From the sequence record MK250021.1: a stretch of 64,000 bases of DNA. The stretch is one strand, 5' to 3'. Positions 12,374-56,871 of this stretch are shown here, piece by piece. Below the pieces are notes generated by a model. The model had not been told where the DNA came from. It did not search any database and saw only the letters and a program-made list of their open reading frames with translations. A program made the translations under genes and the position numbers. How positions within the stretch are numbered: the stretch's first letter is position 1; every line of letters begins with the position of its first letter.

Positions 12374-12380
12374 ATAAATA
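12374..12380 (+). promoter_or_regulatory. Putative late promoter ATAAATA
   Basis: 24 nt upstream of ATG 12405. The ATAAATATAAAAAGA context is also present at 18809 and at 32295 (-). Confidence 0.5.
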
Positions 12381-43021: not shown

Positions 43022-43055
43022 TACAAAGATACATATAATTTTGGAATATAAAAAA
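43022..43055 (-). promoter_or_regulatory. Bacteroidota sigmaA-type (early) promoter, -7 TAnnTTTG
   Basis: T-run...ATGTATCTTTGTA on the - strand; one of six near-identical copies. Confidence 0.75.
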
Positions 43056-44223: not shown

Positions 44224-44230
44224 ATAAATA
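44224..44230 (+). promoter_or_regulatory. Putative late promoter ATAAATA
   Basis: 26 nt upstream of ATG 44257. Confidence 0.4.
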
Positions 44231-44256: not shown

Positions 44257-45160
44257 ATGAAATTCATTAAATTATTTGATAATAAAGAATAGTTAGATAA
44301 TTATGCCAATGGAATTTCACATCGAGATGGTGCATTTATACTATCTGAAAAAAAAAAAAGAGAAACTAAGTATTATTGATGAAAGACATCCAGGTCCAAA
44401 CTGTATTTATGTATAGGATTTAAATATGTCTCCATTATCATTAGAATCAAATTCGTCGAAAGATGTAAAAGTTGGCTCAATATTATATGTAAACACTAAT
44501 AATAAGTTAACATTAAATAATGAACCTGGTAATATGGCAATTGCTATATGTGTATGTCCATCAGTTACAGAAGATTTTGAAGCTGGTAATTCAACAGGTG
44601 AAAGTAAAGTAAAAACTGCACGTTTTTGTAGTCTTTACTATATGAATTAGGATATAGTAGGTACTGCTAGTATTAATGATACAACAGTATAGTTTAATAT
44701 GAAAGGATATACTATAGGAAATACATATGGTAATAGATCTAGTACTAGTTATATTGGTGGTAAAAAAAATACATAGATATTAGTAGAAAAATCATCATAT
44801 TATTATGATACTAAAAGATTATTATGTAATATATCATTTTCTAATATTTATAATGGTGTTTTTCTTGGCTGTAATGCTGCAGTTTCTGCTGCTGTATATA
44901 GTATACGTGGTACAAAAAGAGGTGATTGGTATTTACCATCAGTGGGAGAATTAAAAGAGATGTATAGTAAAATTTCCATAATCAATCCTATTAGAAAACA
45001 ACTAGTTAATGAAGAATACAAAATGTAGGGGCATTATTGGACAAGTTATGAATATAATGCAGACAATGAATCTGCAATATTATTCACCAATGGTGCTATA
45101 ACATATGCTGATAAAAAAATGAGTAAAAGAGTAATACCATTTTTAGCAGTTTCTATATAA
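44257..45160 (+). CDS. DUF1566/C-type-lectin-fold protein, frameshifted in an A12 tract (300 aa if A11)
   Basis: The MKFIKLFDNKE(TAG)LDNY... frame hits TGA at 44377. The frame after A12 (44348-44359) stays open with 5 TAG to TAA 45158 and contains GDWYLPSVGEL...HYWTSYEY...VIPFLAV. Confidence 0.7.
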
Positions 45161-45206: not shown

Positions 45207-45887
45207 TTACTTCTTATATAAAATATTATCAATCATTCCTTTAGAACCATATGATTTTGCTTCTTCTGCTGTCATCCAAAAATCTCTATCTGCATCAGAT
45301 TTAATTTTTTTCATTGTTTGCCCAGAATGATTTGCAATAATATCATAAAGTTCTGTTTTTAACTTATTTATTTCTTTACATGTAATTTCTATATCACTTG
45401 CTTGGGTATGATCTCCAGTAGATGACATAGGTTGGTGAATCATTACACGTGAATGTGGTAATGCGTATCTCTTTCCTTCAGTTCCTGCACAAAGTAATAT
45501 ACTAGCCATACTAGCTGCCATACCGGCACATATAGTAGATACATCAGACCTTATAAATTGCATTGTATCATATATCTCTAATCCTGAATATACATCACCA
45601 CCTGGTGAATTAATATAAATAGAAATATCAGTATTATCTACATTATCAAGATATAATAATTGAGATGTAATAATATTAGCACTTTCTGCTGTTACAGGAT
45701 TACCTAAGAAAATAATTCTATCCATCATCAATCTTGAGAATACATCCATTTGTGATACGTTAAGTTGTCGTTCCTCAAGTATAGTAGGATTTTGATAACC
45801 CATATTTATACCATTCATATAATCATGTAAGTAAAGACTACTTACATTTCTTGAATTCATAAACTTTTCAAAATCAGTTTTAATCAT
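45207..45887 (-). CDS. clpP: ATP-dependent Clp protease proteolytic subunit (Bacteroidota-type)
   Basis: EERQLNVSQMDVFSRLMMDRIIFLG, YINSPGG, GMAASMA (Ser), MIHQP (His), DRDFWM (Asp). Confidence 0.95.
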   Translation of the reverse strand: MIKTDFEKFMNSRNVSSLYLHDYMNGINMGYQNPTILEERQLNVSQMDVFSRLMMDRIIFLGNPVTAESANIITSQLLYLDNVDNTDISIYINSPGGDVYSGLEIYDTMQFIRSDVSTICAGMAASMASILLCAGTEGKRYALPHSRVMIHQPMSSTGDHTQASDIEITCKEINKLKTELYDIIANHSGQTMKKIKSDADRDFWMTAEEAKSYGSKGMIDNILYKK

Positions 45888-47707: not shown

Positions 47708-47741
47708 AGTTATATTATTTTTTAATTAAACATTCTATTAA

Positions 47742-47775
47742 TACAAAGATACATAAAATTATTAAAAATAAAAAA
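47742..47775 (-). promoter_or_regulatory. Bacteroidota sigmaA-type (early) promoter
   Basis: ATGTATCTTTGTA with upstream T-run. Confidence 0.75.
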
Positions 47776-47816
47776 TAGTAATTAAGAAAACTAATATTAA
47801 ATTTCTTAATTACTAT
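47770..47816 (-). terminator. Intrinsic terminator
   Basis: 15-bp stem ATAGTAATTAAGAAA/TTTCTTAATTACTAT with T-run on the - strand. Confidence 0.7.
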
Positions 47817-47825
47817 ATATTTTAA

Positions 47826-48032
47826 TTACTTTGATGACGAGCTAGATGATGATGGAAATAATAATTTAGCAACTGTCATCAAACACAATGCATGAATATA
47901 TGTAATTGTTGGTAAACCAAATAAATATGGCATAACATAATTCCAACAAATCATAAATATAATTGCACCTAAAATAATAAATATAATTGCAACTAAAATA
48001 GTTACAATTGATGTCCATATAAAAGTTTTCAT
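47826..48032 (-). CDS. Small membrane protein (two hydrophobic helices)
   Basis: 68 aa, strongly hydrophobic. Confidence 0.7.
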   Translation of the reverse strand: MKTFIWTSIVTILVAIIFIILGAIIFMICWNYVMPYLFGLPTITYIHALCLMTVAKLLFPSSSSSSSK

Positions 48033-48128
48033 ATAATTTATTTACTTGTAATTAATGCAAATAGAATATTTGATAATACATTAAATCTAAACTTCTTTTT
48101 TGCATATCTACCTTTATTTTTTATTTGT

Positions 48129-48353
48129 TCATACTTCATTATTTCTATTATTATAATAATTAATCAAATCAACTTTCATTTCTTTATTAAATTGATTATT
48201 TCTTTTTCTATTTCTAATAACTCTATCTTCTGCTATTTCACAATTATAACGTTTCCATTTATTTAAAATAGAACGTCTATACTTTGGTTTAATTTTATCT
48301 TTATTATCATGCATATAATCATATACAGCTTGTTCTTTAAAATTATTACTCAT
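48129..48353 (-). CDS. Small basic hypothetical protein
   Basis: Intact ORF. Confidence 0.6.
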   Translation of the reverse strand: MSNNFKEQAVYDYMHDNKDKIKPKYRRSILNKWKRYNCEIAEDRVIRNRKRNNQFNKEMKVDLINYYNNRNNEV

Positions 48354-48390
48354 AGTATATTTTATAAAGATATTTTATTTTCAAAATAAT

Positions 48391-48460
48391 AAAAAATAAA
48401 CATCAAAATTGTGGTTCTAAATCTTACTGCTACTTACTAAGACTACAATTTTGATGTTTA
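48391..48460 (-). terminator. Intrinsic terminator closing ncRNA candidate A
   Basis: 16-bp stem TAAACATCAAAATTGT/ACAATTTTGATGTTTA followed by TTTTTT on the - strand. Confidence 0.75.
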
Positions 48461-49134
48461 TAAAAGCAATCATTCATTATCCTGCAGCATCCATATTAGT
48501 ATAAGTTTCATTGCAATAGAACTTTACAACTATAGTGATAATCCACTTATACATTCTTTTACTCTAAAGTCTTTTATATAACTTTATCATACATAATATA
48601 TGTACTGTCCATCAATAAAAGGTTCTTTATTTCATCATGGTTTTATATCGTATAAACAACCCTCTGTATATCACTGATTCATTTCTTTACATTTAGAAAT
48701 CAGGGTCTTTAAGCCTCAACGTTTGGCTGTAACTATTATCCTCAACCATTACCAGATAATGTCATCTTGTTTTTGTGGTGCATCTCACATACCTCCTTTA
48801 ATCATAAAACAAGCAAAACTACTAAGACAAATAACGTTTCTTAGAACTTCTACGAATTTACGCTCATATCAAATCATCATCTGATATAGACACCTAAATT
48901 AAGTGAATAAAGTTTACGACTCAATATAAAATTTTATATCTCAACCTTTATCAAAAACGATTCATTAAATTCTTTTAAGGAACTTATTTCTAATTAAATG
49001 AAGGATTCATTTAAAATAGGTTCTCCCGAAAACATGCGGTTTATCCTTACTCATTATAATTATAATAAGCGTTGTTTATAGCACTCATTAGAATTCATTA
49101 TGTATTATCTAACTCTCATTTATAATATTCATAA

Positions 49135-49163
49135 TTTATATGATATTAAAAGCAAAATGTCTA
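49135..49163 (-). promoter_or_regulatory. Possible second, sigma70-type promoter TAGACA-N17-TATAAA
   Basis: Same 17-nt architecture as 38750, 54852 and 54968; lies inside a hairpin. Confidence 0.35.
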
Positions 49164-49241
49164 ATATCATATTATAAATTATTTGTCTCGTTAGATATTA
49201 TCAAAATTTCAAAGATCTCTTCATTGTTATTTTATTAACAA

Positions 49242-49275
49242 TACAAAGATACACATTCTTTTTTAATAAAAAAAA
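49242..49275 (-). promoter_or_regulatory. Bacteroidota sigmaA-type (early) promoter
   Basis: GTGTATCTTTGTA with upstream T-run; points into the ORF-free region A. Confidence 0.7.
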
Positions 49276-49303
49276 TATTCTAAGAAAAAATTAAAAATAT
49301 TTT

Positions 49304-50104
49304 TTATCTTACAAAACATGTTGCATATCCATGTTCAACCTTAATAAATAATACTTCACCATTTAACCACAATTTATCAAATGGCGTTTTATCACCATTT
49401 TCTTGCATATCTTTATGTTCATCAATAGCATATTTCTCAATGTCATCAATACTACCTTTATAATAATTCTTTATGTTATCAGATTCAAGATATGCAATTC
49501 GCGACTTACATTCGTCAAGAAGTTCTTCAAATACAGGAACAGATTTATTACAAAATCTGTCATACTCATTCTGAAAATTAATATTAGATGAACAAATACC
49601 ATTTGTAATAATACGAGATACATTTTCAAGTTTCTCTAGATTATCAAGGTCTACATAAAAATCATCGCATGTAATATCATTATCTTTATACATACCAATA
49701 ACATGAACTTTTGCATTCCATAATTCACACCATTTATTTGCACCATCTTCTATAAGCTGTCCAAAATCATTATCATGAAAATCAAACATAATCATGAAAT
49801 TTTTATCAACCTTAATATCACTAGTTTCATATGGATCACCTTTATACTTATGACCATCATAAAGACCTGTAAGATATGAAGAACGACTTATCCTTAAAAT
49901 CTCTTTCAAACAAAAATCCTTAATTTTTTTATATTCTTCATCATTTAGATTATCAGTTCCATCAAGCAAATCTAATACTGAGTCATAATATTTTTCTTCA
50001 TTTTTTACATAGTCATAAGACATATCTACAAATGGCTTGCCGAACATACGAATTTCAGATTTATTCATATCTTCTTGCATCTTCTTAAGATCTATTTCTT
50101 TCAT
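49304..50104 (-). CDS. Hypothetical protein (266 aa)
   Basis: Intact ORF. Confidence 0.75.
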   Translation of the reverse strand: MKEIDLKKMQEDMNKSEIRMFGKPFVDMSYDYVKNEEKYYDSVLDLLDGTDNLNDEEYKKIKDFCLKEILRISRSSYLTGLYDGHKYKGDPYETSDIKVDKNFMIMFDFHDNDFGQLIEDGANKWCELWNAKVHVIGMYKDNDITCDDFYVDLDNLEKLENVSRIITNGICSSNINFQNEYDRFCNKSVPVFEELLDECKSRIAYLESDNIKNYYKGSIDDIEKYAIDEHKDMQENGDKTPFDKLWLNGEVLFIKVEHGYATCFVR

Positions 50105-50117
50105 ATTTCTTAATTAT

Positions 50118-51059
50118 TTACATTGTTCCATCATTAGGTTGCAAACACATAATTCCACGTTCTCGCCACATCTTAACCACTTTAGAAGAATCTTCCAATA
50201 CAAACAATACATTATAATAAGGTTCAATATATTCCTTATATAAATTATATTTACAATCTGGACCCTTTGTAAAATTCTTCAAAGGTCTCATTAACACCTT
50301 ATCAACATTACCAATAAGGTTATTCTTCAACCAATCTTCTGTTGCATGTCTAATATCGTCTGTATCTTCTCTACCTGTCAATATAATGACATCCACTGAT
50401 TTATCGGCAATATATGTATTAACAAGTTGGCAAAGTTGCTTACATGGTTTATCATCCCTCATGCTATCAGCAGCACCATTACCATAAAATGGCCGACCTT
50501 GAAGATTAAAACAAAGTGTAGCATCCATATCTACAAGAATACAATTCTTCTTCGTTTCATCAAACTTCTTAAAGCTATTATATTGCTTATTATTAAGTTG
50601 TGTAGCAATAAAGTTTCTATATCGCCTATAAGTAGATTTGATAACGGATTCACCTATAGGATTAGATCTAAATGAATCTCTTCTAATACATTCCTCTACC
50701 GATACATCAAAGAAATCCTTAAATTCCAATGTATAATGATACTCATTATGTGTCTCATTATACTTATCAATTCTATCTTGCATTTCTTTCCATCCCTTTG
50801 GATTCAGGTTCATATTATCCATAATGATATTCCAACCTTTTTCCATAGGTGATTTAAAAAATGCATCTGTCATATCTTTAATAACAGAAAGTTTCTCACG
50901 TGATTCTACCCAATACTCACCGAACATGTTTCTAAGAGAATCCCAATTAATTCTAATTCTCTCAGTTGGTTTCTCCTTTACCCAATGTTCAGCGAATGTA
51001 GACTTACCAGACGCTTGAATACCTCTTGTCAATATAATTACCCTTTCTTTCATATTCAT
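50118..51059 (-). CDS. pseT: Polynucleotide 5'-kinase/3'-phosphatase (T4 PseT-like)
   Basis: P-loop GIQASGKST, RINWDSLR; HAD motifs LVDMDATL, LTGR, RP...D...K, LEDS. Confidence 0.9.
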   Translation of the reverse strand: MNMKERVIILTRGIQASGKSTFAEHWVKEKPTERIRINWDSLRNMFGEYWVESREKLSVIKDMTDAFFKSPMEKGWNIIMDNMNLNPKGWKEMQDRIDKYNETHNEYHYTLEFKDFFDVSVEECIRRDSFRSNPIGESVIKSTYRRYRNFIATQLNNKQYNSFKKFDETKKNCILVDMDATLCFNLQGRPFYGNGAADSMRDDKPCKQLCQLVNTYIADKSVDVIILTGREDTDDIRHATEDWLKNNLIGNVDKVLMRPLKNFTKGPDCKYNLYKEYIEPYYNVLFVLEDSSKVVKMWRERGIMCLQPNDGTM

Positions 51060-51077
51060 ATTTTATTTAATTAGCAA

Positions 51078-51111
51078 TACAAAGATACATAATTTTTAGG
51101 AAAATAAAAAA
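51078..51111 (-). promoter_or_regulatory. Bacteroidota sigmaA-type (early) promoter
   Basis: ATGTATCTTTGTA just upstream of pseT. Confidence 0.75.
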
Positions 51112-51237
51112 TTAATTATTATCAAATACTATATTTTCAACAAAATTAAGTTTCTTATAATTTCTATTCTTTGAATACTTATCGATTATTTTTAAAAAAT
51201 CGACCATAAATCTATAATCAAATTCTGGTTTATTCAT
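51112..51237 (-). CDS. Small hypothetical protein (41 aa), absent from track
   Basis: MNKPEFDYRF...; start overlaps the stop of the 51230 ORF. Confidence 0.4.
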   Translation of the reverse strand: MNKPEFDYRFMVDFLKIIDKYSKNRNYKKLNFVENIVFDNN

Positions 51238-51448
51238 CTTTTAACATCATTGCAAGAATAACAGATTTCATACATGTCATATATCCTTTAAGATACATAT
51301 CTTTCAACATCAACCAAATTCTTTCAAATTCATCTGGTATCTTTTCACTTGTATCATCAGATATATTAGAGTTACCGACAATAGTTTTAAGCTCTCGCCG
51401 TGCTTGATAATCAGCCATTGCATTTAATTTATTCTTATTAAATTCCAT
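51230..51448 (-). CDS. Hypothetical protein
   Basis: Intact ORF in operon. Confidence 0.65.
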   Translation of the reverse strand: MEFNKNKLNAMADYQARRELKTIVGNSNISDDTSEKIPDEFERIWLMLKDMYLKGYMTCMKSVILAMMLKDE

Positions 51449-51451
51449 ATT

Positions 51452-52147
51452 TTATTTAGATTTTAATCCTAAACAATATTCTTTATTAATATTATCAATA
51501 AAAGAATTAATTCTAATTCTTAGTAATTCTGATTCTTCTTCAAATTCCTTAATTTTATCAATGTCTTTTTTAATATCATCTATATTATGATTTAACAAAT
51601 ATTCATACGTATTAGGTTTAGATACTTTAAAATAATAAATATCTTCATTCATAATATTATTATGATTTAAAGCACATAATAAATGATAAGATTCCTCATT
51701 TGCAGATGAACCATGATAACCATATCCATCACTTTCAAAATATATACATAATGGTCCATAACTATAATGTCCACCTGGATATACAGTTGTTCTTAATGAG
51801 TTAATATGAAATGATTTACATATATTATATTTCTTATCTAAATAATCATTCAATAACTTATTAATACTCATCATTTGAAGATCTAATAATCTATCTAAAT
51901 TTATATCATTATTCTTACTTATATATACACTGGAAACTTCTTTTACAACTGAATCAATATCTAATTCATAATTCTCGTCTGTATATAAATGAAGAATACA
52001 AAGAAATAATCTATGTATATATTCTTTCTTATCGTAATTTATATATGCAGTTTTTAATTTTTCTACATAATCATCTGTCACCTTCTTATTGATGTTATAT
52101 TCGATATTCTTTATAAATTCTTTTTGCTCATTCTATGTCATAATCAT
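51452..52147 (-). CDS. Hypothetical protein (231 aa)
   Basis: The track GTG start extends through one TAG (codon 5) to ATG 52147, which forms an ATGA overlap with the upstream stop. Confidence 0.7.
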
Positions 52148-52341
52148 TGCTCTTTTATTTTTCTTAAAATAAATTTAGGTTCTTGATAATAAAAATAATC
52201 TATTGTTTTATCATCTATAATGTTCAAATTATATAATGCTTGTGAAAACCTAATATCCTTATATGTCGTAAGATACTTCTTTAATATATCTAATATTTCC
52301 ATATTAGCATTGTATCTCTCAAATGTTTCTTTAGTTTCCAT
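52144..52341 (-). CDS. Hypothetical protein
   Basis: Intact ORF with overlapping start/stop at both ends. Confidence 0.65.
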   Translation of the reverse strand: METKETFERYNANMEILDILKKYLTTYKDIRFSQALYNLNIIDDKTIDYFYYQEPKFILRKIKEQ

Positions 52342-52739
52342 TAGAATAACGGATTAATTTTTATCTCGTTTGTTTTACTATATTCTTGTACATCTAAATT
52401 CAATGTTTCATTTAGCCAATCAGCAATTAAATGTCTGTGACAAAATTCATCTGGTTTTTCAAAACAACATAAAGCACAATCTTTATTACCTGTTATAAAC
52501 TTTAATCTATCTATAAATAAAGTTGGTTCTTTAAATATAGATAAAACTTCAGCTTTATATCGTTTTCTAAACTCTTGATGATTGCTTCTACAATTATTCA
52601 ATATATCTGGTGTAGGTGCGATACTTGCTAAGTTAACCCCTTTGAAATCATTTGGCGGATAACAACACACACCTATAGGAATAATATTATTCTTTATAAG
52701 ATTATTAATATTACCAAAATAGCTTGTATATATTTTCAT
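52341..52739 (-). CDS. DUF488-like protein
   Basis: MKIYTSYF..., APT, LCCFEKPDEFCHRHLIADWL. Confidence 0.65.
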   Translation of the reverse strand: MKIYTSYFGNINNLIKNNIIPIGVCCYPPNDFKGVNLASIAPTPDILNNCRSNHQEFRKRYKAEVLSIFKEPTLFIDRLKFITGNKDCALCCFEKPDEFCHRHLIADWLNETLNLDVQEYSKTNEIKINPLF

Positions 52740-52948
52740 ACACGAAATAAACTATATATTTCATTATAAGTTTCTTTTGATATTGGATATGATACTATAT
52801 TACAATATTCTCCGAAATTCTGATCAACATCTACCATATAACCTTGTTTATATGTATCATAATAGCATCTTACTATATGTGAAACATTAACTAAACCTGA
52901 ATATGTATCAATAAATTTATTATAATTTTTATTTTTTAACTTAATCAT
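52736..52948 (-). CDS. Hypothetical protein (70 aa)
   Basis: Start reassigned to ATG 52948, because the longer track ORF overlaps the + strand gene at 53008. Confidence 0.55.
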   Translation of the reverse strand: MIKLKNKNYNKFIDTYSGLVNVSHIVRCYYDTYKQGYMVDVDQNFGEYCNIVSYPISKETYNEIYSLFRV

Positions 52949-53007
52949 AATACTAAAACTATATAACTTAATGTTTATATAATATATAAATGTTTTTGTT
53001 TTATTTA

Positions 53008-53331
53008 ATGGGAGGTTTTGTTTATTTAATTTGCGATCCTGAATAGAATTGTTATAAAATAGGTGTAACAAGGAATATAGCATAGAATAGATTAAAGTAG
53101 TTATAGACTGGTAACTCATCAAAATTACATATGGTTTCAAATATATATTGTGAATATCCTTTTAGACTTGAAACAATGTTACATAATAAATTCAATCATA
53201 AACGTGCAAATGGTGAATGGTTCTATTTAGAATAGGAAGATATAAGTAATTTTAAAACTATATGTGAAGAAACAATATAGATGATTAATGTAATGAAAGA
53301 TAATCCATTCTTTAGTAAAGATTTAAAATGA
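53008..53331 (+). CDS. GIY-YIG-superfamily T5orf172/MUG113-like protein (107 aa), absent from track
   Basis: With TAG=Gln: GFVYLI...YKIGVT...RLKQLQTGN...E..LH..F...R.NGEWF; 6 in-frame TAG; TGA stop then terminator. Confidence 0.8.
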
Positions 53332-53376
53332 ATAAAGGTGATATAAGAATAATAAAACTTATATCACCTTTATTTT
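53331..53376. terminator. Bidirectional intrinsic terminator
   Basis: 17-bp stem AATAAAGGTGATATAAG/CTTATATCACCTTTATT between convergent genes. Confidence 0.85.
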
Positions 53377-53651
53377 TAATTATCGTTCTTTTCTAATTCC
53401 TTATTAATATAATCCATATCTTCATCTGTTAAATCGCCAAATGATGTGAATAAATCTTTATTAATAAGTCCATATCTCATAAGATATGCTAATGTCATTC
53501 TTACAGCATAATCTGCAATATCATAAGTTGTTGTAACTTCTAAATTTTGTAAATCTGGATTATTACCAACTACATTAGAAACTTTATCAACAATCTTATC
53601 ACATGTTTTTTTCATTGAATTTAATTCATTATTTGTTAATTTGGTACTCAT
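53376..53651 (-). CDS. Hypothetical protein (91 aa)
   Basis: Start reassigned to MSTKL (ATG 53651), since the longer track start runs into the terminator at 53715. Confidence 0.6.
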   Translation of the reverse strand: MSTKLTNNELNSMKKTCDKIVDKVSNVVGNNPDLQNLEVTTTYDIADYAVRMTLAYLMRYGLINKDLFTSFGDLTDEDMDYINKELEKNDN

Positions 53652-53706
53652 AATATCATTAAATAATTTAATTATTATATTACAACGATATGCATAAAGT
53701 TTAGAA

Positions 53707-53749
53707 ATAAAAAATGAGTTATTAGACTTATGCACAATCTAATAACTCA
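53707..53749 (-). terminator. Intrinsic terminator closing ncRNA candidate B
   Basis: 12-bp stem TGAGTTATTAGA/TCTAATAACTCA plus T-run on the - strand. Confidence 0.75.
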
Positions 53750-54815
53750 CAAACACTTTATTCTAAATTTATTATATTTACATCTTATTTAAAGATGTCC
53801 CTCATGTTGTTATTCGTACGAACATAAGTTTCTGCCTCTTATGATTCACTTTAACGTTTGCCCGTTATATAATGAATGTTCATACTGAACTTCGTTATGT
53901 CCATAAGGACAAATGGCTGAGAACTTGACCAACACCTACTCTCAATGCTGTAACGTTGGAGTTACATGTTCACACAACTCTTATTTCTAAGAGGTTGAGA
54001 GCATACCCACGACTTTTGTAAAAAATCGTAAACTCTTACTTGATAGGTTTCATAGAAATTCATTTCATACCAACTTCCTTGGAAGGATTCAATGTGTCCC
54101 CACATTTAGCACGATACTACTCTTACTATTCTCATGTCTTTCCTTGCGGTACTCGAATCATGTCTACATATTACAGTAGAATAAGGGTATTTTAACCACC
54201 AAGTGTCGCACACTTTTGCTTATACATAATTATATGTTAAATAAAATAATTTCCAATATTATTATTCTTATTATATATTCTTTAGACTTGAAAGACGAGG
54301 TGCGACCAATAGCATTTCTTCCTTTTGAGAAGAACCCACTAAATCGCCTTTCTGAAATTTCGTTACACCAATGTAACCATATTTCTACTCTTATAACTTA
54401 CCTATTGTTTTTCAATAGTAATCTTACCATTTCTGAACAAGTTACCAGCTTGTATAAATTATTTGGTTTATAATTTATATAAGATTCATTATAACAATTA
54501 ATATTAGCACTGGGAATTGGTATTCCGATCACTAAATATCCATAAACTTAAACTTCTATTGTATTACTACTCACATCAGTTGTCTATCAAACTTCCAATG
54601 TATATAAACTTCATCTCAGGAATTATCCCATCAATTTCCCATTTATACAGGCACTTACTAAGTTTGGTTTTCTGTAGAATGCTCATTATTCATAAACATC
54701 GATAAACATGTCTACTGTTTACCTTTATCACATCACTGCTTTATCCTTACCCCACCGAAACCATGGGTTTATATTTCAAAGAACTCATCTTGAATAAAAT
54801 AAATTCATTCAAATT
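53707..54815 (-). ncRNA. Candidate long structured ncRNA B (~1.1 kb, possibly two modules)
   Basis: No credible ORF and visibly more G+C than the flanks. GNRA-capped hairpins on the - strand (GCGA 54201-54215, GGGA 54091-54106, GAAA 53978-53993). Tandem promoters, boxA-like GTTCTTTGAAAT and a terminator. Confidence 0.55.
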
Positions 54816-54823
54816 TTATACTT

Positions 54824-54852
54824 ATTATATAATCAATAATTTAAAAAGTCTA
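54824..54852 (-). promoter_or_regulatory. Sigma70-type promoter TAGACT-N17-TATAAT
   Basis: Exact 17-nt spacing; points into region B. Confidence 0.6.
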
Positions 54853-54939
54853 TATTTTAATAGATATATTTCAAAATTTTTATTGTTAACTGTTATTAAA
54901 AATATTAAATATTAAAATCTTTTTAAACTTGATTCTAAA

Positions 54940-54968
54940 TTTATATATTAAATTAAATAGAAAGTCTA
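54940..54968 (-). promoter_or_regulatory. Sigma70-type promoter TAGACT-N17-TATAAA
   Basis: Tandem copy 116 nt upstream of the previous one. Confidence 0.55.
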
Positions 54969-54994
54969 TATTTCAATACAATATTTTTAAAAAA

Positions 54995-55171
54995 TTATTT
55001 TAAACAATATTCTAAATCAAATATAAAGTCTCCTAATAGTTCAATCTTTTTCCTAATAAGTTCTGATTCTAAATCAAATTTATGATCTATACAAAAATTT
55101 AATTCAATATATAACTTATCTCTATTAGATTTCCATTTATCTATTAATTCTTTCTTTGTTAATTTTTCCAT
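54995..55171 (-). CDS. Small hypothetical protein (58 aa), absent from track
   Basis: MEKLTKEELIDKW...; ATG lies 1 nt from the upstream stop. Confidence 0.55.
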   Translation of the reverse strand: MEKLTKKELIDKWKSNRDKLYIELNFCIDHKFDLESELIRKKIELLGDFIFDLEYCLK

Positions 55172-55172
55172 C

Positions 55173-55673
55173 TTAAAAATTCATTATATTTACACCAGCA
55201 ATAGAAAGAAATTTTATATTCTTAATAATTTCACATGCTTTATCTTCTGGAAATATAATTTTAAAATCATCATAAACATCCATTACTTCTTGCCATTTAC
55301 ATTCATCTCTTGGTGCTTCCATAGAAGTATATATTTTAGCAATAAGCATTCTTTTTTTAAATTGATTATAAAACGTACTTCTTGGATACATCCCATGTTC
55401 ATATCCTCCATTTGGATGATGTCCCATCCAATCAGGTTCAATATAATGACTCCATTTTACTCCTTCAAAATATAAAGTCTTATCTGGTTTTACACTAATA
55501 GAAATACTTTTATTTTTATCTTTTTGATATTCTATAAATTCAAGAAAATTATTTAATGCATCAAGATATTTCTCTGCATATTCTGCTTCTTCTTTTTTAT
55601 CAAAAATATAACTAAAACCAAAAGTATTATCTACAACTTCATATTTTACTTTTGTCTCAATCTTATTAATCAT
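55173..55673 (-). CDS. Hypothetical protein
   Basis: Track ORF; start probably MINKIETK (55673) or MINYK (55697). Confidence 0.65.
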   Translation of the reverse strand: MINKIETKVKYEVVDNTFGFSYIFDKKEEAEYAEKYLDALNNFLEFIEYQKDKNKSISISVKPDKTLYFEGVKWSHYIEPDWMGHHPNGGYEHGMYPRSTFYNQFKKRMLIAKIYTSMEAPRDECKWQEVMDVYDDFKIIFPEDKACEIIKNIKFLSIAGVNIMNF

Positions 55674-55689
55674 ATTATTATTTTTATAA

Positions 55690-55842
55690 TTAATCATTTT
55701 CTCCCCATGGTAATTCACTATCTGGATCTATTACATCACCACCATGATTACCATCTACATTAAAACCTGATTGAAAATTACTCATAATATTCATGTCAAC
55801 AGGAATAACATTAATATTTGGTTTTATATAATTCTTTTTCAT
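55690..55842 (-). CDS. Small peptide with MKKxYxKP leader-like N-terminus (50 aa), absent from track
   Basis: MKKNYIKPNINVIPVDMNIMSNFQSGFNVDGNHGGDVIDPDSELPWGEND; fills the gap between flanking genes. Confidence 0.6.
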   Translation of the reverse strand: MKKNYIKPNINVIPVDMNIMSNFQSGFNVDGNHGGDVIDPDSELPWGEND

Positions 55843-55885
55843 ATTAAAATTCTTCAACTCGTTATTCAAATAATGTTTTCTAAAA

Positions 55886-56164
55886 TTATTTAACTGTTAC
55901 TTTAATTTTAGATTCTGTTACCTTTCCATTAACTACAGTATTTATAGTATCAATAGAAATAGAATCCAAACTCTTAATGAATACATTAGGAATTTTTTCT
56001 ATAGTAATTAAACTATCTCTATATTGAATAGAATCTTTACTCAAATTAATTGTATCATGTATAGGTTCTTGATTCAAACTAGGAATATGTTTATTAATCC
56101 AAAAATATTGAACAGCAATACCAATAATAATTCCAATAATAAATGTCCAAAAAATATGTTTCAT
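55886..56164 (-). CDS. Single-pass membrane protein with D(S/T)(I/L) motifs
   Basis: N-terminal TM helix, then DTI, DSI, DSL, DSI, DTI. Confidence 0.65.
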   Translation of the reverse strand: MKHIFWTFIIGIIIGIAVQYFWINKHIPSLNQEPIHDTINLSKDSIQYRDSLITIEKIPNVFIKSLDSISIDTINTVVNGKVTESKIKVTVK

Positions 56165-56188
56165 TTTTCTATATTATTTAAAATAAAA

Positions 56189-56395
56189 TTAAACTTTTAA
56201 ATTAACTAAATCTTTATACTTTATTTCTTTATACTTTGTTTTATTAATAGATATAAAAATAGGCTTATCAGTATAACTTTTATAATAATTTAACGATTCG
56301 TCTTTACTAATAAACCACTTTGTTTCTTTATCTAAAATTTTTCCAGATAAACTTCTTCCTAATCCTATCCGAATAATAATATTATTTTTCAACAT
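56189..56395 (-). CDS. Hypothetical protein
   Basis: Intact ORF. Confidence 0.55.
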   Translation of the reverse strand: MLKNNIIIRIGLGRSLSGKILDKETKWFISKDESLNYYKSYTDKPIFISINKTKYKEIKYKDLVNLKV

Positions 56396-56437
56396 AATTA
56401 AAAATAATTTTTCAAAAAGAAATTTATAAATTAATTA

Positions 56438-56871
56438 NNNNNNNNNNNNNNNNNNNNNNNNNNNNNNNNNNNNNNNNNNNNNNNNNNNNNNNNNNNNNNN
56501 NNNNNNNNNNNNNNNNNNNNNNNNNNNNNNNNNNNNNNNNNNNNNNNNNNNNNNNNNNNNNNNNNNNNNNNNNNNNNNNNNNNNNNNNNNNNNNNNNNNN
56601 NNNNNNNNNNNNNNNNNNNNNNNNNNNNNNNNNNNNNNNNNNNNNNNNNNNNNNNNNNNNNNNNNNNNNNNNNNNNNNNNNNNNNNNNNNNNNNNNNNNN
56701 NNNNNNNNNNNNNNNNNNNNNNNNNNNNNNNNNNNNNNNNNNNNNNNNNNNNNNNNNNNNNNNNNNNNNNNNNNNNNNNNNNNNNNNNNNNNNNNNNNNN
56801 NNNNNNNNNNNNNNNNNNNNNNNNNNNNNNNNNNNNNNNNNNNNNNNNNNNNNNNNNNNNNNNNNNNNNNN
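56438..56871. other. Assembly gap (434 N)
   Basis: Run of N. Confidence 1.

What the first reader, a model, noticed from the sequence alone, without database searches (positions are those of the whole stretch)
53008..53331. Hidden GIY-YIG/T5orf172-like gene in which every Gln is TAG
All 6 Gln codons in 107 aa are TAG (no CAA or CAG), four of them in the first 33 codons, including both in RLKQLQTGN. It lies antisense in the early region, next to ncRNA candidate B. A putative nuclease that cannot be translated until recoding starts would be a strong example of recoding used as a safety lock (inference).
Basis: partly seen in the sequence, partly recalled or inferred. Interest (0 to 1): 0.65.

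Follow-up and report, generated by a model that had tools for sequence, protein, structure and literature searches.

The report
All-amber GIY-YIG gene in Lak megaphage
A small, conserved nuclease-like gene of a Lak megaphage really does spell all six glutamines with the reassigned stop codon TAG, but comparison with the rest of the genome and with related phages shows this is the extreme end of ordinary late-gene recoding rather than a dedicated, conserved safety lock.

Summary
The window is a Prevotella Lak-B megaphage (100% identical to MK250021.1). The ORF at 53008-53331 lies on the + strand, between - strand TAG-free genes. It encodes 107 aa with 6 TAG, 0 CAA and 0 CAG. It matches MUG113 (1e-17), T5orf172 (3.5e-12) and GIY-YIG, and it folds like Slx1, I-TevI and UvrC. 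TAG occupies Gln positions that standard-code relatives write as CAA or CAG, including the invariant Gln of LQTGN. The genome carries a Gln-like tRNA(CUA). The observation and the family call are therefore confirmed.

The "safety lock" reading is only partly supported. This is the only all-TAG gene among 563, but an over-dispersed model expects 1.1 such genes by chance. Lak-A/C keep TAG at 5 of 5 sites, against 53% retention in other late genes (p about 0.04). A 93%-identical relative already has CAA at Gln33. Four TAG-recoded relatives encode the ortholog with no TAG at all. The gene is syntenic across more than 100 huge-phage contigs, has no DNA-binding domain and shows dN/dS of 0.2-0.3. It carries neither the early nor the late promoter motif. 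A recoded endonuclease inside an early gene was already described by Borges et al. This is a new member of a known kind.

The parts
53008..53331 (+). 107-aa stand-alone T5orf172/MUG113 (GIY-YIG superfamily) gene, stop TGA. All six Gln codons are TAG, at 53044, 53083, 53098, 53104, 53233 and 53278.
   Evidence: frame and codon counts. (Pfam). (model pLDDT 83.7; the top 20 structural matches are all GIY-YIG nucleases). (319+ orthologs of about 107 aa; Y6, K17-G19, R28, Q33-N36, E55, H59, E70-W71 and N99 are invariant in the 25-sequence alignment). (dN/dS 0.22-0.29 against Lak-A/C).
52949..53007 (+). 59-nt divergent intergenic region upstream of the gene. It holds a TATATAAT box (52976-52983) that recurs in similar form in orthologous loci. 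It has no canonical Lak early motif (TATCTTTG) or late motif (ATAAATAnnnwAA).
   Evidence: upstream sequences of orthologs. (motif discovery and scoring; the target's late-motif score is -0.5, below 80% of TAG-bearing genes and 69% of TAG-free genes). That this is a promoter is inference only.
53330..53375 (.). Perfect 18-bp inverted repeat with a 10-nt loop, followed by a U-run, between the gene's stop and the stop of the convergent - strand gene. Likely a two-way terminator.
   Evidence: dG -20.9 kcal/mol, z = -8.0, 0 of 200 shuffles fold as well. The consensus scan missed it because its loop limit is 8.
52736..52948 (-). 70-aa TAG-free gene that diverges from the T5orf172 gene. No family match.
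52341..52739 (-). DUF488 gene, TAG-free in Lak-B. It is the conserved upstream neighbour of the T5orf172 gene in related phages.
   Evidence: PF22751 1e-11. (the same neighbour, on the opposite strand to the target, in L017, L020-L023 and L186).
53376..53651 (-). 91-aa TAG-free gene that converges on the T5orf172 gene. No family match.
53830..54800 (-). It gives a GOLLD-like RNA match at 53914-54352. It is context, not part of the gene.
   Evidence: Rfam GOLLD 62.8 bits, E 1.2e-15, below the gathering score of 150; spans model positions 1-416 of 416. (90% nt identity to Lak-A over 1011 nt; 72-74% to L020 and L021). (a 971-nt contig of an RNA-seq run lies on 53830-54799 only).

Best explanation
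The ORF is a genuine, conserved core gene of Lak-like megaphages. It encodes a minimal stand-alone GIY-YIG-superfamily (T5orf172/MUG113) nuclease-like domain, on its own short transcription unit set against the surrounding - strand block.

It belongs to the alternatively coded (TAG=Gln) gene set. With host RF1 reading UAG as stop, ribosomes would end at codon 13. Full-length protein is made only once the phage's Gln-type tRNA(CUA), helped by phage RF2 as published for Lak, lets UAG be read as Gln.

That dependence is a real mechanistic consequence, and it is shared with about 208 other genes of the genome. The 100% TAG state is most likely the tail of the broad gene-to-gene spread of TAG use in a gene with only six Gln. 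At most, a weak lineage-specific preference in the Lak-A/B/C subclade reinforces it. It is not a conserved, gene-specific lock.

Shown here: the frame, the family, the fold class, purifying selection, TAG=Gln at conserved sites, presence of the suppressor tRNA, synteny, and codon usage across orthologs.

Inferred: nuclease activity, the translational block before suppression, and late timing.
For: Identity: 100% identical to Lak-B2.

Gene and family.

Fold: Slx1 Z 5.4, HIGLE 5.1, I-TevI 4.1, UvrC 3.3, with no other fold among the top 20.

Purifying selection: dN/dS 0.22-0.29 at dS 0.56-0.78.

TAG=Gln: TAG33 sits in the invariant LQTGN motif, which all 90+ TAG-free orthologs examined here write with CAA or CAG. 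The tRNA(CUA) has U1-A72, G2-C71 and G3-C70, like the phage's own tRNA-Gln genes.

Genome-wide codon use: 208 of 563 genes hold TAG, and the TAG share in them is 0.41. The target is top-ranked, but other genes reach 6/7, 5/6 (three genes) and 19/24. The beta-binomial model expects 1.1 all-TAG genes.

Orthologs in TAG-recoded relatives, TAG out of all Gln codons:
- Lak-B 6/6, L186 5/6, L185 5/6, Lak-A/C 5/5
- L126 6/8, L127 4/8, L021 2/4, L187 2/5, L109 2/6, L020 1/5
- L017 0/4, L023 0/5, L022 0/3, L118 0/2
Pooled this is 38/73. Outside the Lak-A/B/C subclade it is 17/50.

L022, L023 and L118 are themselves recoded, because neighbouring genes read through 2, 4 and 7 TAGs.

The same + strand gene between - strand genes is seen in every locus whose gene calls were listed, including standard-code ones.
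Against: Within the Lak-A/B/C/L185/L186 subclade 21 of 23 Gln codons are TAG. Lak-A and L185 each keep 5 of 5 of Lak-B's TAGs. Other late genes of similar synonymous divergence (0.31 against 0.23-0.30 codon mismatch) keep only 34 of 64. That gives a nominal p of about 0.04 per pair and about 1e-3 or less for three lineages, borderline after correcting for 179 genes.

TAG at codon 26 is kept in all ten TAG-bearing lineages.

Other homing-endonuclease-like nucleases of the genome are also TAG-rich: 8/13, 3/4, 4/6, 2/4 and one 0/4. Pooled without the target this is 17/31 against 0.41, p = 0.08.

These points leave room for some selection for TAG. No expression data exist for the gene: the RNA run had no contig on it.
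Confidence: 0.65

Rival explanations
1. Selected safety lock. Exclusive TAG use, with several TAGs in the first 33 codons, is maintained by selection so that a potentially harmful nuclease, sitting in and transcribed against an early block, cannot be made until the code switch.
For: Highest TAG share in the genome. 5 of 5 TAGs retained in Lak-A/C and in L185, against 53% background retention. TAG26 kept in all ten TAG-bearing lineages. The flanking 19 kb is almost TAG-free. All three GIY-YIG-superfamily hits in the genome hold TAGs inside the domain, one of them in a TAG-free block next to tRNA(CUA). Published precedent for a recoded intron endonuclease in an early gene.
Against: About one such gene per genome is expected by chance. 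Four recoded relatives have TAG-free orthologs, and in L022 the neighbour is recoded instead. L186 has CAA at Gln33 at only 7% protein divergence. Standard-code relatives keep the gene with no lock. Two of the three HNH genes do hold TAG, but one nuclease has none. Toxicity is untested. The suppressor tRNA's own timing is unknown.
Confidence: 0.25
2. Free-standing homing endonuclease (a T5orf172-type HEG) that invaded the early block. Its TAG content reflects its origin in another recoded phage.
For: It belongs to the T5orf172 family, whose phage members are mostly HEGs. It has opposite orientation, its own terminator and an island-like codon usage.
Against: There is no DNA-binding domain, whereas 87% of T5orf172 HEGs have Zn-finger domains. 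It sits at the same syntenic place next to DUF488 in divergent relatives, and between opposite-strand genes wherever gene calls were listed. The family was found on more than 100 huge-phage contigs. There is no paralog in the genome. It is under purifying selection. The ortholog tree holds the TAG-bearing orthologs together in one part of the tree.
Confidence: 0.05
3. Not a translated gene: either a decayed pseudogene riddled with stops, or a chance ORF on the antisense strand.
For: Under table 11 the frame has six stops. A public annotation of Lak-B7 calls only the last 66 aa.
Against: All interruptions are TAG. They fall at Gln columns of a family with 319+ full-length members. dN/dS is 0.2-0.3. 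Pfam E-value is 1e-17. The fold model is confident.
Confidence: 0.02

Closest known systems
Alternatively coded late/lysis genes of TAG- or TGA-recoded phages, including the recoded group I intron endonuclease in an early gene of Agate phages (Borges et al., 10.1101/2021.08.26.457843)
   Same: An in-frame reassigned stop in a nuclease gene that sits among standard-code genes. A suppressor tRNA is encoded by the phage. The proposed effect is the same: no protein until the code switch.
   Different: Here the nuclease is not an intron HEG but a conserved stand-alone domain. The bias is not consistent across related recoded lineages, whereas Borges et al. based their claims on family-wise significance.
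T5orf172-family homing endonucleases of ICP1-like vibriophages (Barth et al., 10.1101/2023.03.23.533998)
   Same: The same Pfam domain, a GIY-YIG subfamily with a catalytic Glu.
   Different: Those proteins carry one or more Zn-finger or RepA_N DNA-binding domains and are sporadic and mobile. This one is 107 aa, the domain alone plus a conserved C-terminal (K/E)DNPFF tail, and it is syntenic.
Structurally solved GIY-YIG nucleases: Slx1, At-HIGLE, I-TevI catalytic domain, UvrC N-terminal domain, T4 EndoII
   Same: Same fold class in the model. The GIY-type Tyr (Y6), the Arg (R28) and the Glu (E70) are invariant in the 25-sequence alignment.
   Different: Only weak structural scores (Z 3.2-5.4) and no sequence-level match to any PDB chain. 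The second Tyr is Y/F and other residues in the family, with an invariant KIG. Slx1 needs a partner and I-TevI needs a DNA-binding domain; no partner is known here.
Small stand-alone T5orf172/GIY-YIG proteins of other phages (Tenacibaculum phages pT24 and PTm1, Escherichia phage HK106)
   Same: 34-40% identity over 76-95% of the query. Annotated as T5orf172 domain-containing or GIY-YIG family protein.
   Different: These are standard-code phages. Their function is also uncharacterised.

Membership tests
T5orf172 / MUG113 (Pfam clan GIY-YIG) | Score above the curated Pfam cut-off | tested here: met
   MUG113 64.8 bits (cut-off 22.3). T5orf172 47.2 bits (cut-off 20). GIY-YIG 22.7 bits (cut-off 22.6). 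PHROG 8130 4e-21.
T5orf172 / MUG113 (Pfam clan GIY-YIG) | GIY-YIG alpha/beta fold | tested here: met
   AF2 model pLDDT 83.7. The 20 best VIA-align rows are all GIY-YIG nucleases, Z 3.2-5.4. The scores are modest, and Foldseek gave no E <= 0.001.
T5orf172 / MUG113 (Pfam clan GIY-YIG) | Conserved catalytic Tyr, Arg and Glu | tested here: inconclusive
   Y6, R28 and E70 (plus K17-G19, H59 and N99) are invariant in 25 orthologs. Their equivalence to I-TevI Y6/R27/E75 rests on the Pfam and fold match and on my own knowledge, not on a residue-level superposition.
T5orf172 / MUG113 (Pfam clan GIY-YIG) | Nuclease activity | not testable with these tools
   Needs purified protein.
Homing endonuclease gene (T5orf172-type HEG) | Nuclease domain joined to a sequence-reading DNA-binding domain | tested here: not met
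   107 aa. The Pfam match covers residues 3-81, and the rest is one helix plus the DNPFF tail. 87% of T5orf172 HEGs have Zn-finger domains.
Homing endonuclease gene (T5orf172-type HEG) | Sporadic, mobile distribution | tested here: not met
   The same position beside DUF488 in Lak-A/B/C, L017, L020-L023 and L186. No paralog in the genome.
Alternatively coded (code 15) gene set of Lak phages | In-frame TAG at positions that are Gln in relatives | tested here: met
   TAG at Q13, Q26 and Q33 aligns with CAA or CAG in L017, L020-L023 and others.
Alternatively coded (code 15) gene set of Lak phages | Phage-encoded amber suppressor | tested here: met
   tRNA(CUA) at Lak-B2 415547-415619, with a Gln-like acceptor stem. 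RF2 is reported for Lak phages in 10.1101/356790; I did not re-test this.
Alternatively coded (code 15) gene set of Lak phages | Late-class promoter (ATAAATAnnnwAA at -40 to -21, found here upstream of most TAG-bearing lead genes) | tested here: not met
   Best score -0.5. No exact core motif. The early motif is absent too.
Preferentially recoded gene family in the sense of Borges et al. | TAG share consistently above the genome background across related recoded phages | tested here: not met
   38/73 overall and 17/50 outside the Lak-A/B/C subclade, against a 0.41 background. Four recoded relatives have 0 TAG. Only flanks of the relatives, not whole genomes, could be read.

The most novel reading that the evidence does not exclude
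In the Lak-A/B/C subclade, selection holds every Gln of this minimal GIY-YIG nuclease as TAG. More widely it holds one early TAG, codon 26, in all ten TAG-bearing lineages. Under this reading the enzyme is written against an early transcription block, lacks both standard promoter classes, and is gated purely at translation by the code switch. That would be a checkpoint tying a DNA-cutting activity to the appearance of tRNA(CUA).
Probability: 0.2. Interest if true: 0.55.

Novelty: new member of a known kind. Interest (0 to 1): 0.3.

Why it matters
If the lock were real, it would be a clean, small test case for the idea that phages use a mid-infection change of genetic code to time dangerous proteins. 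The system is one 107-aa gene, six TAGs and one tRNA.

What the evidence supports is more modest but still useful.
- The gene gives independent, residue-level confirmation that TAG is Gln in Lak phages: an invariant motif Gln is written as TAG.
- TAG, CAA and CAG exchange quickly among Lak lineages, so per-gene 'all-TAG' patterns in short genes must be judged against an over-dispersed background and against orthologs.
- It defines a widespread, uncharacterised family of stand-alone T5orf172 proteins in huge phages that is worth a biochemical look.

Tried and rejected

- The whole genome of the window is not held. I built a composite from Lak-B2 outside the window only. The masked stretch 56438-56871 was never fetched or filled.
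- The genome search cannot reach the ENA/Logan records behind L017 and L020-L023. The code status of those relatives was therefore judged from TAG read-through in their flanking genes.
- A paralog search in the genome found none.
- A PDB sequence search with the family profile gave only chance hits. Foldseek gave no E <= 0.001. The VIA second look gave consistent but weak GIY-YIG rows.
- The sigma-70/terminator consensus scan gave fewer promoter-like sites than shuffles and no terminator, because the hairpin loop is 10 nt. Direct folding shows the hairpin.
- Reads: the only RNA run holds a contig on the neighbouring ncRNA, not on the gene. The other run is contigs of unknown type. Nothing can be said on expression, strand or timing.
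- PADLOC gave only weak hits to the T5orf172 end of PD-Lambda-1 and PDC-S57. I do not read this as a defence system.

**Hypotheses tested and rejected**
- Late-promoter membership: the target lacks the motif.
- A nucleotide-level constraint on the 5' part of the gene as the cause of TAG retention. Neighbouring synonymous sites are diverged, pS 0.31-0.47.
- The pseudogene, chance-ORF and mobile-HEG readings (see the rival explanations).

**Not run**
- The large representative protein search, because the family scans settled the protein.

Full report
**What the window is.** Window 50000-56400 is 100% identical to Prevotella phage Lak-B2, B4 and B8, and about 82% identical to Lak-A and Lak-C. Window position 1 corresponds to Lak-B2 434001. 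Lak phages are published as TAG=Gln (code 15) megaphages that carry a tRNA(CUA) and RF2 (10.1101/356790). No whole genome is held for the window. I therefore joined Lak-B2 1-434000, the window, and Lak-B2 498001-549839. The masked stretch 56438-56871 stayed as N and was not looked up.

**The observation.** On the + strand, 53008-53331 reads as 107 codons plus TGA. The six interruptions under table 11 are all TAG, at codons 13, 26, 31, 33, 76 and 91. There is no CAA or CAG. The start at 53008 (MGG...) agrees with the N-termini of over 100 orthologs, and the ATG six codons upstream does not.

The neighbours are on the - strand and are TAG-free:
- a 70-aa gene (52736-52948) and DUF488 (52341-52739) upstream and divergent;
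- a 91-aa gene (53376-53651) downstream and convergent.

Polynucleotide kinase-phosphatase (50118-51059) and ClpP (45207-45887) lie further along. A perfect 18-bp hairpin followed by a U-run (53330-53375; dG -20.9, z -8) separates the convergent stops. The gene is therefore a self-contained unit written against its surroundings.

**What the protein is.**
- Pfam gives MUG113 1.1e-17, T5orf172 3.5e-12 and GIY-YIG at its cut-off. PHROGs gives several families of unknown function plus 'endonuclease' and 'homing endonuclease' families.
- A word search finds 319+ proteins, nearly all 105-113 aa.
- In a 25-sequence alignment Y6, K17-I18-G19, R28, L32-Q33-T34-G35-N36, E55, H59, E70-W71 and N99 are invariant, and the C-terminus carries a conserved (K/E)DNPFF tail.
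- The AlphaFold model (pLDDT 83.7) has the beta-beta-alpha-beta-alpha core. Its 20 best structural neighbours are all GIY-YIG nucleases, including Slx1 Z 5.4, HIGLE 5.1, I-TevI 4.1 and UvrC 3.3, though with weak scores. No PDB chain matches by sequence.
- T5orf172 is described as a GIY-YIG subfamily with a catalytic Glu. Its phage members are mostly homing endonucleases with Zn-finger DNA-binding domains (10.1101/2023.03.23.533998). This protein has no such domain.
- It has no paralog in the genome.
- It sits beside DUF488 on the opposite strand in Lak-A/B/C, L017, L020-L023 and L186. It lies between opposite-strand genes in more distant, standard-code phages as well.
- dN/dS against Lak-A/C is 0.22-0.29 at dS 0.56-0.78.

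It is therefore a conserved core gene under purifying selection, not a pseudogene and not a mobile HEG. Nuclease activity is inferred, not shown.

**TAG is Gln here.** Gln33 of the invariant LQTGN motif is TAG in Lak-A/B/C. It is CAA or CAG in every one of about 90 TAG-free orthologs examined. Q13 and Q26 align with CAA in L017 and L023. Several standard-code relatives use TAG as the stop of this very gene, right after ...NPFFxKNLK. The composite genome has a tRNA(CUA) at 415547-415619. Its acceptor stem (U1-A72, G2-C71, G3-C70) matches the phage's own tRNA-Gln(UUG) and tRNA-Gln(CUG).

**Is all-TAG unusual in this genome?** My simple gene set has 563 genes, of which 208 hold TAG. In those, TAG:CAA:CAG is 1373:1701:283, a TAG share of 0.41. 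The target is the only gene with two or more Gln that is 100% TAG. The next highest are 6/7, 5/6 (three genes), 4/5 and 19/24.
- A plain binomial gives 0.0047 per gene and 0.22 expected all-TAG genes with 5 or more Gln.
- The gene-to-gene spread is wide (5th-95th percentile 0.08-0.73). A beta-binomial fitted to it gives P(6/6) = 0.021 and 1.1 expected all-TAG genes among 179.

One is observed.

**Orthologs.** Lak-A1, A2 and C1 (73% aa identity) have TAG at all five shared Gln sites and no CAA or CAG. For comparison, in 22 other gene pairs between Lak-B and Lak-A, a TAG at a conserved Gln stays TAG in 34 of 64 cases, or 53%. The synonymous codon mismatch in those genes (0.31) is similar to the target's (0.23-0.30). 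So 5/5 has a nominal p of about 0.04.

| Lineage | Identity to Lak-B | TAG / Gln | Note |
|---|---|---|---|
| L185 | 75% | 5/6 | new Gln44 is CAG |
| L186 | 93% | 5/6 | invariant Gln33 is CAA |
| L126 | 58% | 6/8 | |
| L127 | 57% | 4/8 | |
| L021 | 68% | 2/4 | |
| L187 | 66% | 2/5 | |
| L109 | 64% | 2/6 | |
| L020 | 71% | 1/5 | |
| L017 | 59% | 0/4 | |
| L023 | 61% | 0/5 | |
| L022 | 64% | 0/3 | |
| L118 | 55% | 0/2 | |

The TAG-free cases are not simply standard-code phages:
- in L022 the DUF488 neighbour reads through two TAGs inside its conserved domain;
- in L023 the adjacent 227-aa gene holds four TAGs;
- in L118 a repeat protein has TAG at the same repeat position seven times.

On the ortholog tree the TAG-bearing and these TAG-free rows fall together in one group of 16, within a larger group of 29. 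Pooled, the family has 38/73 TAG, and 17/50 outside the Lak-A/B/C subclade, which is close to the 0.41 background.

Two things remain suggestive of some preference for TAG. The Lak-A/B/C/L185/L186 subclade has 21/23 TAG. TAG at codon 26 is present in all ten TAG-bearing lineages. A local nucleotide constraint does not explain this, because synonymous sites in codons 1-40 are diverged, pS 0.31-0.47.

**Timing and promoters.** K-mer contrasts of upstream regions separate two motifs.
- TGTATCTTTG(TA), which contains the Bacteroidetes-type TAnnTTTG element, stands before 44 of 164 TAG-free lead genes and 0 of 89 TAG-bearing ones.
- ATAAATA, extended to ATAAATAnnnwAA, is sharply placed 21-40 nt before the start of TAG-bearing genes.

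In the window the first motif precedes - strand genes at 43032, 47752, 49252, 51088, 60131 and 62630. The second precedes nearly every TAG-bearing gene start. The target has neither. It has only a TATATAAT-like box that recurs in orthologous upstream regions. Its temporal class is therefore not established.

The one RNA library that shares sequence with this stretch has a contig only on the neighbouring non-coding region.

**Other nucleases in the genome.** All three GIY-YIG-superfamily matches in Lak-B2 contain TAG within the domain.
- The target.
- A 298-aa gene (3/4 TAG) that has a late motif.
- A 253-aa I-TevI-like gene (8/13 TAG). It sits in a TAG-free block 6 nt after the preceding gene and 24 nt before the tRNA(CUA).

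Of three HNH genes, two hold TAG (4/6 and 2/4) and one has none. Pooled without the target this is 17/31 against 0.41, p = 0.08. With the target it is p = 0.007. This fits the published note of a preferentially recoded intron endonuclease in an early gene of Agate phages. It does not by itself separate 'locked because dangerous' from 'expressed late, hence drifting in the late codon pool'.

**Verdict.** The sequence observation and the family assignment are right. The consequence that no full-length protein can be made while UAG is read as stop follows from known termination biology. It is shared with about 200 other Lak genes. The claim that this gene is a strong, selected example of a lock is not borne out. 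The all-TAG state is expected about once per genome. It is confined to one subclade and is broken in a 93%-identical relative. It is absent in four recoded relatives. The concept already has a published precedent. A weak, lineage-specific preference for TAG cannot be excluded, and I put it at about 0.2-0.25.

Noticed in passing
window 53830-54800 (- strand; GOLLD match at 53914-54352): The roughly 1-kb ORF-free stretch beside the gene is more conserved than the coding DNA around it: 90% nt identity to Lak-A over 1011 nt and 72-74% to L020 and L021. It is the only part of 50500-56400 present as a contig (971 nt) in a gut RNA-seq run. It matches Rfam GOLLD across model positions 1-416 of 416 at 62.8 bits, E 1.2e-15, below the gathering score of 150. 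No held paper mentions GOLLD together with megaphage. Devoto et al. noted large expressed intergenic regions.
   Followed up: partly
window: early motif on - strand at 43032, 47752, 49252, 51088, 60131, 62630; late motif at 12374, 17052, 18809, 29941, 41014, 44224 (+) and 29934, 32295, 38739 (-): Two sharply separated promoter-like motifs track the genetic code of the downstream gene. TGTATCTTTGTA, with a Bacteroidetes-type TAnnTTTG, stands before 44 of 164 TAG-free lead genes and 0 of 89 TAG-bearing ones. ATAAATAnnnwAA, which resembles the T4 late TATAAATA, lies 21-40 nt before TAG-bearing genes.
   Followed up: partly
L014:14762-15523 (+) and L014:15547-15619 (Lak-B2 414762-415523 and 415547-415619): An I-TevI-like GIY-YIG gene with 8 of 13 Gln as TAG sits in an otherwise TAG-free block, immediately upstream of the amber-suppressor tRNA(CUA). 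A late-type motif lies at Lak-B2 414175, before the preceding TAG-free gene, so the suppressor may itself be late-transcribed.
   Followed up: partly
L012:46127-46199 (Lak-B2 346127-346199): ARAGORN calls a tRNA with anticodon UUA, which would read TAA. Yet TAA is the stop of 495 of my 563 genes. Devoto et al. mention several Sup tRNAs of uncertain relevance.
   Followed up: no
window 44303-45160 (+): Another + strand recoded island among - strand TAG-free genes: 285 aa, 5 TAG and 1 CAA, a late motif at 44224, and a weak sub-threshold Lcl_C match.
   Followed up: partly
L022:2043-2441 (-): In this relative the pattern is reversed. The DUF488 neighbour carries two in-frame TAGs inside its conserved domain, while the T5orf172 ortholog has none.
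   Followed up: yes
L118:35-604 (+): A leucine-rich-repeat-like protein with TAG at the same position of seven repeats (...DISqW...), where other repeats have N or D. This is a tidy internal demonstration of sense TAG.
   Followed up: no
window 47708-49303: A second long stretch without convincing ORFs. Early-type motifs lie on the - strand at 49252 and 47752. It may be another non-coding RNA.
   Followed up: no
window 53131-53331 (protein P0035): A public record of Lak-B7 calls only the last 66 aa of this gene, from Met42, with TAG read as Gln. Existing annotation therefore holds the gene truncated at its 5' end.
   Followed up: yes
window 56438-56871: 434 N (masked or a gap). Left as is; no copy of this stretch was fetched.
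   Followed up: no
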